Assembly (NCBI GenBank): GCA_009103225.1
Contig: RHPI01001116.1
Coordinates: 124,001 to 188,000, forward strand
DNA: 64,000 nucleotides
DNA from: Chlorokybus atmophyticus
Taxonomy: Eukaryota > Plantae > Mesostigma and Chlorokybus algae
Direction: 5' to 3'
Under the pieces are notes generated by a model. That model was given only the letters and a program-made list of their open reading frames with translations. It did not search any database and was not told the DNA's origin. The translations under genes and the position numbers were made by a program. Each line of letters starts with the position of its first letter. Positions within the stretch are counted from its first letter, which is position 1. Positions 58,994 through 63,919 of this stretch are shown one piece after another.

Positions 58994-61900
58994 ATGGCTG
59001 AGGCGGCTGCTGAGGACGAGGCTGGCATGATCATGGCGCCGCTGGCCTCTCTTGCAGGCTTCCGCATGGAGAGGCTGCTGTCTGAGGATGCTAGAGCTAA
59101 GATTGTCTATGTCCTTGGCAGGTGAGACGAATAAGCGATGCTGGAATGCCTCGAGCCTATTAATCATGCATTGTGTGTATGTAGCTGAGACCATGCTGCT
59201 GCAACGGCCACTTCCGCATTGCGAGTGACTGCTGTAGCATAGCCCATGCGGCTTGATGTTCAGCCTTGTGCAAGTGAGCATAGAGTGTGCTTTAACAGAG
59301 CACACACACTTTAGCTGTTGTTCCAAACTTGGTACATACGTCAACACGAACATACCAATGCATGTGATGCATAGGTATGTTCGTGAAAATGCTGCCCGTT
59401 GTTAGCCAGGCATAGTTGTTCAACTGCATGCTTGCAAACAGTTGTGCTTGTAAGCACAGTGGTTGTGTAAGTACCAAACACTAACAGAACAAGTAAACTG
59501 TCAGCGGAGACAGGACAGGACAAGCAGACAACACTTGTTAGTTCAACTCTTTGCGCAATGGCTGTTGCGTCGGTCAGCTGGCGCATGTCTTGTGGCAACA
59601 AGACACGCGCCAGCTGACCGACAGCTGGCTTCCACGTCTAAAAAGCACGGCTGTACATACATAAGCATAGCACCAAATGGGAGGCTTGTATGTAAGCAGA
59701 ATGTTCTGCGGCATTAGTCAAGGGGTATTAGTCCCCAGCTCGGTCCATACATGTAGAGCAGTCCCATGTTGTAACCATGCAGCACGATGTCATAGGCTTG
59801 AGTTGTGCGTGGTGAAGGTGGTGCATGCAACGCAGCAGTTGTAGAGCATTGAGTGGCCAATGCACAATGCATATTGTGCATATTGTCATCAACTCGGTGT
59901 TTGATATGCTTTATGCTACCACTCACACGTGTGCTTGCGATGGGGTGCACACCTTCAATTGTTCACAAGAGGTTGTCGCGTCTCCAGTTTTGCAGATCGC
60001 CCAGGGCACATGATTGTTGCGCTTGAGCGCCGTCACTTTGACATAGGCAACCTGGACCGATTGTTCTCGGAAGAAACCCCCCTGTCGTTTGTCATGCAAG
60101 TGAGTGAAGGCCTTGCACAGTGGTGTCGTGTGCAGAATGGTCAATTGCTTCTACGAAACATAGTGGTTGTTGAGTGTTGAGTTAAACTCTTTCTGCCACG
60201 TGTAACTAGTGAGCTCACGAGAGCATTCTTGCGCGTTGCATTTGACCTCTGTTGTTCTGAATGCAGAATGACATCTATGGCCAGTATGCTGGCATCACGC
60301 CTCCAGAGCTTAGTGTGGTCAACGTCAATGTCATCTACCCAGGTAGGCATTGGTGAGGGAGCAGTTGTACAATTAAACTCACATGCTCCCCCCCTCCCCC
60401 CCCCCCCCCCCCCCCCCCCCCCCCCCCCCCCCCCCCCCCCCCCCCCCCCCCCCCCCCCCCCCCCCCCCCCCCCCCCCCCCCCCCCCCCCCCCCCCCCCCC
60501 CCCCCCCCCCCCCCCCCCCCCCCCCCCCCCCCCCCCCCCCCCCCCCCCCCCCCCCCCCCCCCCCCCCCCCCCCCCCCCCCCCCCCCCCCCCCCCCCCCCC
60601 CCCCCCNCCCCCCCTACCCACACACGCGCAAGGCGCGCATGCACACTCGCATGGACGCGCACCCCTGTTTAGAATTGGCGCAATGCTGCTGTTTCATCAG
60701 TCCGCCTACACATTAGTTTGGTGGTCCAACGCCATTATGCTAGTGTGCGTGCGGGCAGGCTGCGTCCACACAGAGGAAGGGGGGGACGTGAGGGGTGTGT
60801 CTGTTGACCGATCCGCGTCTTGCAACGAGATGCTCGCTCGCAAGCTAACTGACGCTCTGCGCATGCGTTGCAGCCACTGAGCGTCACGTACAGAAGTACA
60901 CACAGCAAGCGACGGTGATGGTGTCGGAAGCACCTTTGCTGTATCGAGCAGCTGTCGTGTCTTTCATCAGGAGTGTCCCACTTGAAAGGCTGCAGGTAAT
61001 CACTGTGTCTTCAGTGTTCCCGCCACATGGTACAATGCGCCTTGTCACGGTGCACGTGGAGCAGGGCTTACTTTTGTTACGCGACTCATGCCTGCCCTGG
61101 GTGTTGTGTTGTTTTCCAGTGGGTGTACAACATCCTTGAAAAGAAGGCGGAAGTTGAGAGATTAATCTTTGAGGACGACGATCCAGCCACTGGGTTCATG
61201 CTGCATCCAGACCTCAAGTGGGATACAGCGCAGGTAGCAACCCGACTTGCTTGTTGGGTGCGATAAAGGTGGCGACTTGAAGTGCTTGGAGAGCGCACTT
61301 CAATTTGGATGTGCAACTGTCTACTATATTGTGTTGAATGTGTTGGATGGTGCGCACGACTACGTAATGCAACGTACATGCTGGAAACAGGTGCAGGAGC
61401 TCTACTGCGTTGGCATCTGCCACCGAAGAGATGTGCGGTCGCTGAGGGATCTCACGGCAGAGCACCTTCCCTTGTTGTATAACATGAAGTAGGTGGTTGT
61501 TGGCGTCTTGATGTCTTACAGAACCCATTGCGCCAGGACCTCACTGTTGCTTGCACAACAGAACCAAAGGCGCAGCAGCTTTGCAAGACAGATATGGAGT
61601 GCAGCCATCGCAGCTGCGCATCTATGTGCACTATCAGGTAGTACTTGATTGGACACAGATGACTCGTGCACAAGGTTAACAAGCACGATTGCTCGTGTCT
61701 CCAAAAACTGGCTAAAGGAGTAAATGCTCTGCAGCCCTCATACTATCATTTCCATGTGCACTTTCGCCATGCCAACGCCAATGGAGGCTTCGGCTTCGCG
61801 GCTGGGAAGGCGCATCTCTTGGTATGTGCTTCTGTTCTCATATGCTCTATGGTCGGCGTATGTTGTGTGCGCAAGCAGCTCATGTGGGTTGGGAGCGTTA

Positions 61901-62101
61901 CCAACGCTGGATGGTGCTGCAGGACGACGTAATCAGCAACATCGAGCTTCTGCCTGACTACTACCAGCGATGCACGCTGACGTATTCGCTGGGACAGCAG
62001 GACCCTCTCCTGCAGCACATTGCCGCTGCCGCCAAGGAGCTCGAGGAGTCAGGCGGGCTCGGACCCCATGCAGACCCCAACGACAAGTTCCAGGTGGTTG
62101 G
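58994..62101 (+). CDS. DCPS: m7GpppX diphosphatase (scavenger decapping enzyme DcpS), N-terminal and HIT domains; stops at 62156 if the last intron is retained
   Basis: [104 protein letters not shown] (His triad), [12 protein letters not shown]. Confidence 0.93.
60388..60614. repeat. Poly-C tract (~225 bp) in a DcpS intron
   Basis: Near-pure C homopolymer with one T and one n. Confidence 0.9.
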
Positions 62102-62274
62102 GTGCGTACGCCATATCATGACTCACCTTGCTCGTATGTGTGAGTCTGAGACATAGTATTCTCGCTGCACATGTGACAGCACAGTGCCGTCTCTGTCAGC
62201 TGGCAGTGACGAAGTGTGGTTCTCCTGCATCAACACGCATGGACGGAGATTGATCTCTGCTTCTGCCTGGACAG

Positions 62275-63919
62275 ACTCGATGGTGCGCGGCCTTCAGCGC
62301 CGCAGTATGGCGTGCGGCCGCTGTGGGAGATGTCGGAGACGCGCTTCCTTATCCAGCTGCGCAGCACGCTGGCCAAAGAGTTCACTACGGTAAAGCGCAA
62401 CAAGGCCCTGTGGGAGCAGATTGCATCGCGCATGGCCGAGCGTGGATACCATCGAACTGCTGACCAGTGCCACATGAAGTGGAAAAACCTTGTTGCACGC
62501 TACAAGGTAAACACCAAAACTTCGCTGCTGCTGCTGCTGCTGCTGCTGTTGCCTGTGACAAGCGGCCTCATCCATTGTTGGATGTGGTGCGCATAACAGG
62601 AAGCAAAGAATGGCAAAGACCGCAAGGTTTGCCCATTCTATGAGGAGATGGAGATGTGCATGAACCAGAAGGCTGCGCTGACTGCTGGTCACGCCTTCAA
62701 CGGCTGGGCACCAGCGGGCACCGCGCAGCAGGCGCACTACGACACCACACCGACCAAACACGACCACAACGACATGGTGCAACCCGCCGGCCCGCCACCA
62801 GGCATGTGACGCGCTGTGTGCGTGTCTTTATCATTTCTCTTATTGGCATGTTGGCGTGCATGCCTCGCTGTTTGAGGAGTCTAGGCAGTAACGGTTGGCG
62901 TGTTTCAGGCTCAGACGCTTTGCCATCAGGCGCCGGTCACGATGACACGCCAGCCGATGCAATGGATGCAGTGAAGATGGATGAGGCTGGCATGCTTGTG
63001 GATGATGGCCAGGGTGATGGGATGGAAGGTGATGCTGCTGTGACGCCCTCAGTAAGTCTACTGCGCTTCTGCCTAAGCAACATGCATTGAGATGCCAGTA
63101 GAAATGAGTAGTAGATGCTGTTGCTAGTGATAATGCCGTGTGACACCCTCATTGGTCAGGCTGCTGTGTTGGAAACGCCGCCGGGATTGGACGGGAAGGG
63201 CGTCTTGAACAGGTCAGAGTTCATCATCATTGCTGCATCAGCTGCATGTTGTTATCAACTGGACAAGTGCTGAAGCGCTGCTATGTAACAAGTGTCTGAT
63301 GGGCATCTCGTTGTCGTGCGTTTAGGTCCCCGCAATGGACGGTTGCGGAAACGACGCAGCTCATAGCGTTGCGAGCGGAGCTGCGGAAAGACTTCAACTA
63401 TGTGAAGCGGAATAAGATGCTGTGGCAGCAGATCGCCAGCCGAATGCAGGAGAAGGGCTACCATCGCACGGCCGAACAGTGCAAGATGAAATGGAAAAAC
63501 CTAGGCGCCAAATACAAGGTGATGATGGATTTCCATGCTCCATGCTGTGGGTTGTAATTTGCCTCATGAACTTATTGCAGTTGCGTCATTCACTCACTCA
63601 CTTGTTCAATTACTCATTGCAGGAAGCAAAAGACAACGATCAGCGATGCCCGTTTTATGATGAACTGGATGCGTACTTCAACGGGCGCACGATGGAGGCC
63701 GGCGAGGGCGCCTTCGCGGACACCGATGATGACTTGTCGGATGGGGGCAGTGACGCCCCCAACAGCCTGGAGGAGCTGGGAGACAAGCAGCTCCAGCACC
63801 ACCATGCGCACCCACAACAGCCGCGCAAGAGGAGGAGGATGGTCCCGGACATCGCGCACGTGCCGGAGCTGTTGGCGGGGCTCATAGAGACTCAACAACG
63901 CTCTGAACAGCGCTGGCAG
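62275..63919 (+). CDS. Tandem GT-trihelix (Myb/SANT-like) DNA-binding domains plus acidic region and start of coiled coil; continues beyond window; probably spliced to DcpS
   Basis: Domain 1: WEMSETRFLIQLR..KRNKALWEQIASRMAERGYHRTADQCHMKWKNLVARYKE..CPFYEEM. Domain 2: WTVAETTQLIALR..RNKMLWQQIASRMQEKGYHRTAEQCKMKWKNLGAKYKE..CPFYDELD. Then RKRRR and LIETQQRSEQRW. Confidence 0.9.

What the first reader, a model, noticed from the sequence alone, without database searches (positions are those of the whole stretch)
58994..63919. Probable DcpS-trihelix fusion: cap-scavenging enzyme joined to tandem GT DNA-binding domains
Seen: the last DcpS exon (from 61923) runs past the normal C-terminus through a linker ([21 protein letters not shown]) to a phase-2 donor GG/GTGCGT at 62101/62102. 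The first trihelix exon has a strong acceptor (TCTCTGCTTCTGCCTGGACAG/A, 62274/62275) needing exactly phase 2, giving ..KFQVVGLDGARPSAPQYGVRPLWEMSETRFL. Only 118 bp separate the unspliced DcpS stop (62156) from that exon, and no in-frame ATG precedes the first conserved Trp, leaving no room for an independent gene start. Known: DcpS is a homodimeric HIT hydrolase clearing m7GpppN left by exosomal decay, with no clear ortholog recognised in Arabidopsis; GT trihelix factors are streptophyte transcription factors. Inference: a chromatin-tethered decapping enzyme, or a cap-metabolite-sensing transcription factor dimerised through DcpS; intron retention would yield plain DcpS from the same locus. 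I know of no described DcpS-trihelix protein.
Basis: partly seen in the sequence, partly recalled or inferred. Interest (0 to 1): 0.86.

Follow-up and report, generated by a model that had tools for sequence, protein, structure and literature searches.

The report
Expressed DcpS–tandem trihelix fusion gene
One spliced, selectively maintained gene in this alga-like genome joins a complete, apparently active mRNA cap-scavenging enzyme (DcpS) to two plant GT-1-type trihelix DNA-binding domains, a combination I could not find described or present in the databases searched.

Summary
The last DcpS exon ends at 62101 and the first trihelix exon starts at 62275. They are separated by a 173-nt GT..AG intron and join in frame.

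- **RNA evidence:** RNA-derived contigs from two public samples carry exactly this joint. Each is a single contig running from the DcpS exons to beyond the window end, and neither shows any depth inside the intron.
- **Selection:** one sample matches the window exactly. The other differs at about 3% of positions. Of its 40 listed differences, 37 are synonymous in the fused frame (pN/pS about 0.02), and the junction residues V-G-L-D are kept through two synonymous changes.
- **DcpS half:** it keeps the His triad and the cap-contact residues, and its homology runs to the normal DcpS C-terminus.
- **Trihelix half:** both domains match PF13837 (E about 3e-19) and the solved GT-1 domain. They are 67% identical to each other.
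- **Novelty checks:** none of the 150 closest trihelix representatives among 1.84 billion proteins has DcpS similarity. No paper links the two families.

The function is inferred, not shown: a nuclear, DNA-tethered, dimeric cap-nucleotide hydrolase and transcription factor. The scan noted this same stretch once more from an overlapping window (s1-179481).

The parts
58994..59121 (+). Exon 1, with the start codon in GCCATGG context (aa 1-43)
   Evidence: Frame and GT donor. X1 contig has 411 nt upstream of 60871, which fits exons 1-3 plus about 98 nt of 5' UTR.
59988..60342 (+). Exons 2 (59988-60099) and 3 (60267-60342), the N-terminal DcpS domain region
   Evidence: Frame continuity and splice consensus. 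The end of exon 3 appears as the loose end before 60871 in X1, X2 and X3.
60874..61821 (+). Exons 4-8 (60874-60995, 61120-61233, 61391-61488, 61562-61637, 61735-61821): hinge and HIT-fold C-terminal domain of DcpS
   Evidence: All joints GT..AG in RNA contigs. PF11969 matches in exons 5, 6 and 8. PDB DcpS matches with E 3.6e-12 (exon 5) and 1.4e-9 (exon 6).
61120..61218 (+). Cap-contact residues equivalent to human W175, E185, D205 and K207 (here W147, E157, D177, K179)
   Evidence: Ungapped alignment of exon 5 to human DcpS residues 175-211. The roles of these residues are from my knowledge of the DcpS structures.
61747..61761 (+). HIT His triad H-F-H-V-H (aa 247-251), equivalent to human H275/H277/H279
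   Evidence: Exon 8 aligns to residues 271-297 of human DcpS, and PSYYH.H.H is conserved (also seen).
61923..62101 (+). Exon 9: last DcpS helix, then the first part of a Pro/Gly-rich linker
   Evidence: Aligns to residues 300-333 of the 337-aa human DcpS and 312-348 of the 350-aa mouse chain. Joints on both sides are in the RNA contigs.
62102..62274 (+). Fusion intron, 173 nt, GT..AG, removed in RNA
   Evidence: Joint 62100/62274 (cut +1) in X1. The equivalent joint is present in X3 with CTG in place of 4 letters. Depth is 0 at 62109-62221.
62275..62506 (+). First trihelix exon: rest of the linker plus trihelix domain 1 (W348, W377, W399)
   Evidence: PF13837 E 2.8e-19. Arabidopsis GT-1 DNA-binding domain 2EBI E 5.8e-14.
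62600..63212 (+). Exons 62600-62801 (fourth-helix motif CPFYEEM, GC..AG donor), 62909-63051 and 63160-63212: acidic Pro/Gly-rich spacer between the two trihelix domains
   Evidence: Joints in X1, X2 and X3 contigs. Composition. All 3 listed nonsynonymous differences and a 3-nt deletion fall here.
63326..63518 (+). Trihelix domain 2 (W545, W574, W596)
   Evidence: PF13837 E 2.6e-19. 67% identical to domain 1.
63623..63919 (+). Exon with the second fourth-helix motif (CPFYDEL), an acidic tract, a basic cluster RKRRR (aa 673-677, about 63824-63838), and the start of a helical tail. The ORF continues beyond the window.
   Evidence: Joint 63518/63623 and a loose end of 233 nt after 63920 that begins in frame without a stop.

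Best explanation
This is one gene with at least 15 exons and at least 704 codons. It runs off the window end.

Shown:
- Its mRNA encodes a complete DcpS-type HIT scavenger decapping enzyme.
- A linker of about 36 residues follows, then two GT-1/GT-3-type trihelix DNA-binding domains, each with its fourth-helix motif.
- Next come an acidic tract, a basic RKRRR cluster and the start of a GT-1-like helical tail.
- The transcript is spliced as a unit.
- The fused frame is under purifying selection in a second lineage.
- The catalytic and cap-contact residues are intact.

Inferred:
- DcpS enzymes are obligate domain-swapped homodimers. The protein should therefore dimerise through its enzyme half and present four trihelix domains.
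- It should enter the nucleus through the basic cluster and bind GT-box-like DNA.
- It should retain hydrolysis of m7GpppN and m7G nucleotides.
- The most likely role is a DNA-bound transcription factor that carries an active cap-nucleotide hydrolase. That hydrolase would clear cap remnants that would otherwise compete with nascent caps for the nuclear cap-binding complex.
For: - **RNA joint:** joint 62101/62275 lies in two RNA contigs of 2444 and 2256 nt that run from the DcpS exons to past 63920. There is no intron coverage.
- **Selection:** 37 of 40 listed differences between the alleles are synonymous, pN/pS is about 0.023, and the binomial P is 4e-21. The junction peptide is kept through two synonymous changes (table 5c).
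- **No independent start:** there is no ATG upstream of the first Trp of the trihelix.
- **DcpS half:** PF11969 matches. W175, E185, D205, K207, Y217 and the His triad are conserved against human DcpS. Homology runs to the natural C-terminus.
- **Trihelix half:** PF13837 E about 3e-19 for both domains, and GT-1 domain 2EBI/2JMW at E 6e-14. The closest named relatives are GT-3a/GT-3b-like proteins.
- **Nuclear targeting:** RKRRR cluster.
- **Literature:** DcpS loss causes splicing defects, and DcpS counteracts m7G nucleotides that block the nuclear cap-binding complex (PMC10415132).
Against: - Contigs are assemblies. They prove the splice joint, but not that every molecule runs from exon 1 to the last exon.
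- Contigs drop rare isoforms, so a minor stand-alone DcpS or trihelix transcript is not excluded.
- The run type is only guessed as RNA, although the absence of introns shows spliced RNA.
- There is no protein-level evidence.
- The N-terminal DcpS domain got only a weak single-exon match (E 0.057), and exons 2 and 3 got none.
- Activity, dimerisation, nuclear localisation and DNA binding are all untested.
- The 3' end of the gene lies outside the window.
Confidence: 0.85

Rival explanations
1. It is a conjoined or read-through transcript of two neighbouring genes. The real products would be a stand-alone DcpS (stop at 62156, or polyadenylation in the intron) and a separate trihelix factor. The spliced fusion would be a by-product.
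For: The two halves are complete, separately known protein families placed head to tail. Contigs cannot exclude minor isoforms (notes). X2 has no contig across 61544-62334.
Against: - The fusion is the only form assembled in X1 and X3, at the same depth as the rest of the gene.
- Depth in the intron is zero.
- The trihelix exon has no start codon before its first conserved Trp, and its frame is open only from 62210.
- The junction residues and the linker are conserved in the diverged allele through synonymous changes only.
Confidence: 0.07
2. The fusion protein is real, but the DcpS half is not used as an enzyme. It would serve only as a dimerisation module, or as an m7G-nucleotide sensing module, for a trihelix transcription factor.
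For: DcpS is an obligate dimer that undergoes large open-to-closed movements on cap binding (established structural knowledge of PDB 1ST0/1XMM, recalled, not tested here). Enzyme-derived sensor domains in transcription factors are common. An unchecked scan note reports another trihelix fused to a ligand-pocket domain in this genome (s1-181041).
Against: The His triad and every cap-contact residue examined are intact. No listed nonsynonymous change falls in the DcpS half. That pattern is what an active enzyme would show, although a ligand sensor would also keep the binding residues.
Confidence: 0.15
3. The joint is an assembly artefact, either of the RNA contigs or of the genome assembly.
For: Logan contigs are k-mer assemblies. 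The gene holds a 230-nt poly-C run with an N in intron 3, which hints at local assembly trouble.
Against: - The joint is an exact GT..AG excision that preserves frame.
- It is seen in two runs carrying different alleles.
- It is flanked by 13 other canonical joints.
- The poly-C lies in a different intron that is spliced out.
Confidence: 0.02

Closest known systems
DcpS / Dcs1 scavenger mRNA decapping enzymes (human DCPS, PDB 1ST0, 4QDE; mouse 1VLR; yeast Dcs1 5BV3)
   Same: - His triad H-x-H-x-H.
- The WVYNIL..E...PDLKW cap-binding segment.
- The LY..ICHRR..SLRDLT.EHLPLL segment.
- The C-terminal helix, with all segments in the same order.
- About 146 residues precede the W175 equivalent, as expected for an N-terminal swap domain.
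   Different: Known DcpS proteins end a few residues after the last helix, at 337-350 aa in the solved chains. Here the chain continues for at least 390 more residues with DNA-binding domains. The N-terminal domain was matched only weakly by the single-exon searches.
GT-1 clade trihelix factors (Arabidopsis GT-1, GT-3a, GT-3b; PDB 2EBI/2JMW)
   Same: Both domains have the W-W-W pattern, the KRNK.LWE and KWKNL signatures and a following CPFY(E/D)E(M/L) fourth-helix motif. The best named relatives are GT-3a/GT-3b-like proteins at 48-59% identity.
   Different: - GT-1 clade proteins carry one trihelix domain and no enzyme domain.
- The position of the GT-1 Thr that differs between 2JMW (T) and 2EBI (D) is Asp in domain 1.
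- By the domain 1 / domain 2 alignment it is Glu in domain 2.
- From my recollection of the GT-1 literature, that Thr is a phosphorylation site. An acidic residue there would resemble the phosphomimetic state.
GT-2 / GTL1 clade trihelix factors (two trihelix domains)
   Same: Two trihelix domains in one chain.
   Different: The two domains here are 67% identical to each other. That is more than their identity to any database protein (at most 62%), which points to an independent, lineage-specific duplication. The helical region follows the second domain instead of lying between the two domains as in GTL1 (alignment A1).

Membership tests
DcpS (HIT superfamily, scavenger decapping branch) | HIT motif His-x-His-x-His with the central nucleophilic His | tested here: met
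   [10 protein letters not shown] aligns to human 271-280.
DcpS (HIT superfamily, scavenger decapping branch) | DcpS_C domain (PF11969) with the m7G-contact residues (human W175, E185, D205, K207) | tested here: met
   PF11969 in exons 5, 6 and 8 covers profile positions 2-108 of 114. All four residues are identical in the ungapped alignment.
DcpS (HIT superfamily, scavenger decapping branch) | N-terminal domain-swapped dimerisation domain (PF05652) | tested here: inconclusive
   No Pfam match on single exons. Exon 4 matches residues 113-143 of a fungal DcpS at E 0.057. Exons 2 and 3 gave nothing. The spliced protein could not be submitted whole.
DcpS (HIT superfamily, scavenger decapping branch) | m7GpppN hydrolysis to m7GMP plus NDP | not testable with these tools
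   Needs an enzyme assay.
Trihelix (GT) factors, GT-1 clade | Myb/SANT-like trihelix domain (PF13837) with three spaced Trp residues | tested here: met
   E 2.8e-19 and 2.6e-19. W-W-W is present in both domains. GT-1 structure match at E 5.8e-14.
Trihelix (GT) factors, GT-1 clade | Fourth amphipathic helix motif (F/Y)(F/Y)xx(L/I/M) after the domain | tested here: met
   CPFYEEMEM and CPFYDELDA in the exons that follow. They align with the same motif in plant proteins.
Trihelix (GT) factors, GT-1 clade | Single trihelix domain and no other catalytic domain | tested here: not met
   Two domains plus a DcpS domain. This is therefore not an ordinary clade member.
Trihelix (GT) factors, GT-1 clade | Sequence-specific binding of GT elements | not testable with these tools
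   Needs DAP-seq or EMSA.

The most novel reading that the evidence does not exclude
The protein directly couples mRNA decay to transcription. Cap remnants released by 3'-5' decay would bind the DcpS dimer, and its open-to-closed movement would reposition the four attached trihelix domains. Promoter occupancy would then track cellular mRNA turnover. This would be a one-polypeptide version of the decay-transcription buffering that needs several factors in yeast.
Probability: 0.12. Interest if true: 0.9.

Novelty: new variant of a known kind. Interest (0 to 1): 0.63.

Why it matters
DcpS is usually treated as a soluble housekeeping enzyme at the end of 3'-5' mRNA decay. Its nuclear roles, such as protecting the cap-binding complex and supporting first-intron splicing, are known only indirectly.

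A natural, selectively maintained fusion to sequence-specific DNA-binding domains is a Rosetta-stone hint. It suggests that cap-remnant clearance can be localised at chromatin, or that GT-1-type factors and cap metabolism are functionally linked.

The fusion also offers a simple system to test whether a decay metabolite can regulate a transcription factor. Finally, it adds an unusual member to the early history of the trihelix family, which is reported to have arisen in the streptophyte ancestor (PMC7027972).

Tried and rejected
1. **GTL1-scaffold profile search.** To find the fused protein or fused relatives by length-matched search, I aligned the trihelix exons to an 808-aa plant GTL1 scaffold (A1) and searched with that profile. 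The 120 rows listed were all angiosperm, fern or liverwort GT-2/GTL1 proteins with PF13837 only. The scaffold dominated the profile, so this says little.
2. **Obscure-ORF scaffold.** I used the 434-aa ORF at 12323-13627 as a scaffold for the DcpS exons (A2). MAFFT shredded and overlaid the exons, so I abandoned it.
3. **Fragment search with exon 9.** I searched with the stop-free frame around exon 9. No candidate shared three words.
4. **ESM Atlas on the 38-aa exon 5**. The hits were meaningless.
5. **Metagenome scan with trihelix exon 1**. It returned three loci carrying a trihelix 49% identical and no DcpS similarity nearby.
6. **Exact look-up of the 434-aa ORF** to identify the source record. 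It is not on record.
7. **Bacterial-type promoter/terminator scan of the fusion intron**. Nothing was found, and the scan is not informative for a eukaryote.
8. **Whole-protein searches not possible.** No whole-protein Pfam, structure prediction or DcpS-side architecture search was therefore possible.

The window's own protein appears absent from the 15-billion-protein collection. The best identity to trihelix exon 1 was 62%.
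Full report
**Observation**

I read 58800-64000, translated all three forward frames and built an exon model from splice consensus and frame.

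The DcpS part has nine exons:
- 58994-59121
- 59988-60099
- 60267-60342
- 60874-60995
- 61120-61233
- 61391-61488
- 61562-61637
- 61735-61821
- 61923-62101

The trihelix part has at least six exons:
- 62275-62506
- 62600-62801
- 62909-63051
- 63160-63212
- 63326-63518
- 63623-63919

Joined, they give an uninterrupted 704-codon frame that is still open at the window end.

- The donor GG|GTGCGT lies at 62101/62102.
- The acceptor ..CTGGACAG|A lies at 62274/62275.
- The join is phase 2 plus 1.
- The unspliced stop is at 62154-62156, 118 nt before the next exon.
- No in-frame ATG precedes the first conserved Trp. The trihelix frame opens only at 62210.

**RNA evidence**

A search for public runs holding 60700-63990 returned four runs of one coded organism, from two studies. 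I laid their contigs on 60640-64000. I stayed clear of the poly-C run at 60388-60616, because the tool turns away long repeats.

- **X1:** a single 2444-nt contig with zero mismatches covers exons 4 to 15. It has 411 more letters upstream and 233 downstream.
- **X3:** a single 2256-nt contig covers the same exons with about 3% differences.
- **The fusion joint:** both contigs skip 62102-62274. X1 shows the joint as GT..AG. X3 shows the same excision with three different letters at the junction.
- **Intron depth:** depth is zero in the bin 62109-62221 in every run.
- **Other introns:** all other introns in the stretch are confirmed. After shifting by its 3 ambiguous letters, the joint listed as 62798/62906 is a GC..AG intron at 62802-62908. 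It removes an in-frame TGA at 62807-62809 and links the two trihelix domains into one ORF.
- **Exon 3/4:** the loose end before 60871 is the end of exon 3, so the poly-C intron is also spliced out.
- **Downstream:** the loose end after 63920 continues the frame without a stop.
- **X2:** a small older run with only fragments and no contig over 61544-62334, so it is silent on the joint.

Caveats apply. These are assembled contigs of runs whose type is only guessed as RNA. The missing introns show spliced RNA, and the joint must exist in reads. End-to-end continuity of single molecules, and the absence of rare isoforms, are not proven.

**Selection**

I placed the 40 listed X3 differences on the model.
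- 37 are synonymous third-position changes, spread over the DcpS exons, the linker and both trihelix domains.
- The 3 nonsynonymous changes fall in the acidic spacer between the two trihelix domains. So does one 3-nt in-frame deletion.
- With 401 synonymous and 1396 nonsynonymous sites, pN/pS is about 0.023. The chance of 37 or more of 40 being synonymous is 4e-21.
- Thirteen further differences were not listed, so the ratio is approximate.

At the junction, X3 reads GGG CTG where the spliced window reads GGA CTC. Both encode Gly-Leu. The junction peptide V-G-L-D is therefore preserved through two synonymous changes (tables 5 and 5c). The fusion is thus older than the split of these two lineages, and it is maintained as one reading frame.

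**The enzyme half**

Pfam finds DcpS_C (PF11969) in exons 5, 6 and 8, covering profile positions 2-108 of 114. Against solved structures:
- Exon 5 aligns without gaps to human DcpS 175-211 (E 3.6e-12). W175, E185, D205 and K207 are identical.
- Exon 6 aligns to 214-243 (E 1.4e-9), including Y217.
- Exon 8 carries [10 protein letters not shown] against human 271-280, the His triad.
- Exon 9 aligns to 300-333 of the 337-residue human enzyme and to 312-348 of the 350-residue mouse chain.

Homology therefore ends at the natural C-terminus, and what follows is an addition.

The N-terminal domain is supported only by position, by length and by one weak match. Exon 4 matches residues 113-143 of a fungal DcpS at E 0.057. 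Exons 2 and 3 gave nothing on their own.

**The DNA-binding half**

- Exons 62276-62506 and 63327-63518 each match Myb_DNA-bind_4 (PF13837), at E 2.8e-19 and 2.6e-19.
- The first aligns over 62 residues to the NMR structures of the Arabidopsis GT-1 DNA-binding domain (2EBI at 5.8e-14, 2JMW at 6.3e-13).
- Each domain has three Trp residues. Each is followed in the next exon by a CPFY(E/D)E motif, the fourth helix of GT factors.
- An exhaustive HMMER search of 1.84 billion representatives found 742 relatives. The closest single-domain ones are 48-62% identical. Those that carry names are GT-3a or GT-3b-like proteins of flowering plants.
- The two domains are 67% identical to each other, closer than to anything in the library. 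The tandem therefore arose by duplication in this lineage, not by descent from the GT-2 clade.
- The residue that distinguishes the two GT-1 structures (Thr in 2JMW, Asp in 2EBI) is Asp in domain 1. By the domain 1 / domain 2 alignment it is Glu in domain 2. From my recollection of the GT-1 literature, that Thr is a phosphorylation site that raises DNA binding. This is a lead, not a test.
- After domain 2 come an acidic tract, a basic cluster RKRRR (aa 673-677) and the start of a helical segment. That segment aligns with the coiled-coil start of plant factors.

**Is the architecture known?**

- No paper in the library links DcpS and trihelix in a meaningful way. Searches on DcpS in plants and algae gave nothing relevant.
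- None of the 150 best trihelix representatives shows any similarity to the DcpS half, even at E 10.
- The window's own protein, or anything more than 62% identical to its first trihelix exon, is not in that 15-billion-protein collection.
- Three metagenome loci with a 49%-identical trihelix have no DcpS nearby.

A proper search from the DcpS side could not be done. The spliced protein has no reference, and the length filter excludes single exons. The claim is therefore "not found", not "absent from nature".

**Mechanism**

Shown:
- One spliced ORF.
- Purifying selection on it.
- An intact catalytic and cap-binding signature.
- Two bona fide GT-1-type domains.
- A basic cluster.

Inferred from established knowledge of DcpS structures:
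- The enzyme is an obligate domain-swapped dimer.
- Its C-termini are free, so the fusion should form a dimer that presents four trihelix domains on flexible linkers of about 36 and about 120 residues.

Inferred from the GT-1 family: sequence-specific binding to GT-box-like elements in the nucleus.

The literature supports a nuclear need for the activity. DcpS removes m7G nucleotides that otherwise block the nuclear cap-binding complex, and its depletion causes splicing defects (PMC10415132).

My best reading is a DNA-tethered, catalytically active DcpS and transcription factor. I am highly confident that the fusion gene is real. I am moderately confident at best about what it does.

The alternatives are:
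- The enzyme fold serves only as a dimeriser or sensor.
- The fusion is a read-through by-product.
- The joint is an assembly artefact.

**Context**

The organism is coded. The GT-1-type domains, the intron-rich but compact gene and the literature on the origin of trihelix factors in the streptophyte ancestor (PMC7027972) fit a green, probably streptophyte, alga. That placement is inference.

The scan noted this same stretch from an overlapping window (s1-179481). It also holds an unchecked note of another trihelix fused to a ligand-pocket domain elsewhere in this genome (s1-181041). If that note holds, trihelix-enzyme fusions may be a theme in this genome.

**Verdict**

This is a new domain architecture built from two well-known families. 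It is lineage-specific as far as can be seen, and it carries a clear, testable functional hypothesis.

Noticed in passing
window 60388-60616: A run of about 230 C with a single N at 60607 lies inside intron 3 of the gene. It is either a real homopolymer or an assembly or gap-filling artefact. It is spliced out of the RNA contigs.
   Followed up: partly
window 59569-59622 and 59345-59385: Two tight hairpins lie in intron 1. Their arms are 25 nt (96% complementary, 4-nt loop) and 19 nt (95% complementary, 3-nt loop). They could be MITE ends or small-RNA precursors.
   Followed up: no
window 62802-62908: This is a GC..AG intron, the only non-GT donor among the 14 introns of the gene. It lies just before an in-frame TGA (62807-62809). 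It is confirmed by contigs in three runs.
   Followed up: yes
window 58836-58943: A 35-codon upstream ORF (MATMTAVEQ...) ends 50 nt before the main ATG. The X1 contig starts at about 58896, so it is unknown whether the uORF start codon is transcribed.
   Followed up: no
window 62521-62550: A (GCT)n/(CTG)n microsatellite lies in the intron after the first trihelix exon. Read laying flagged reads as cut there.
   Followed up: no
window 12323-13627: This is the only ORF over 300 aa in the window (434 aa). It is Lys/Arg/Pro-rich with internal repeats (..DGRKPPRAYE.P..HR..). It has no Pfam match and is not on record as a called gene.
   Followed up: partly
window 26001-28000 and 36001-38000: There are two composition outliers. 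GC drops to 0.37 at 26-28 kb. GC skew (+0.20) and AT skew (+0.31) are strong at 36-38 kb.
   Followed up: no
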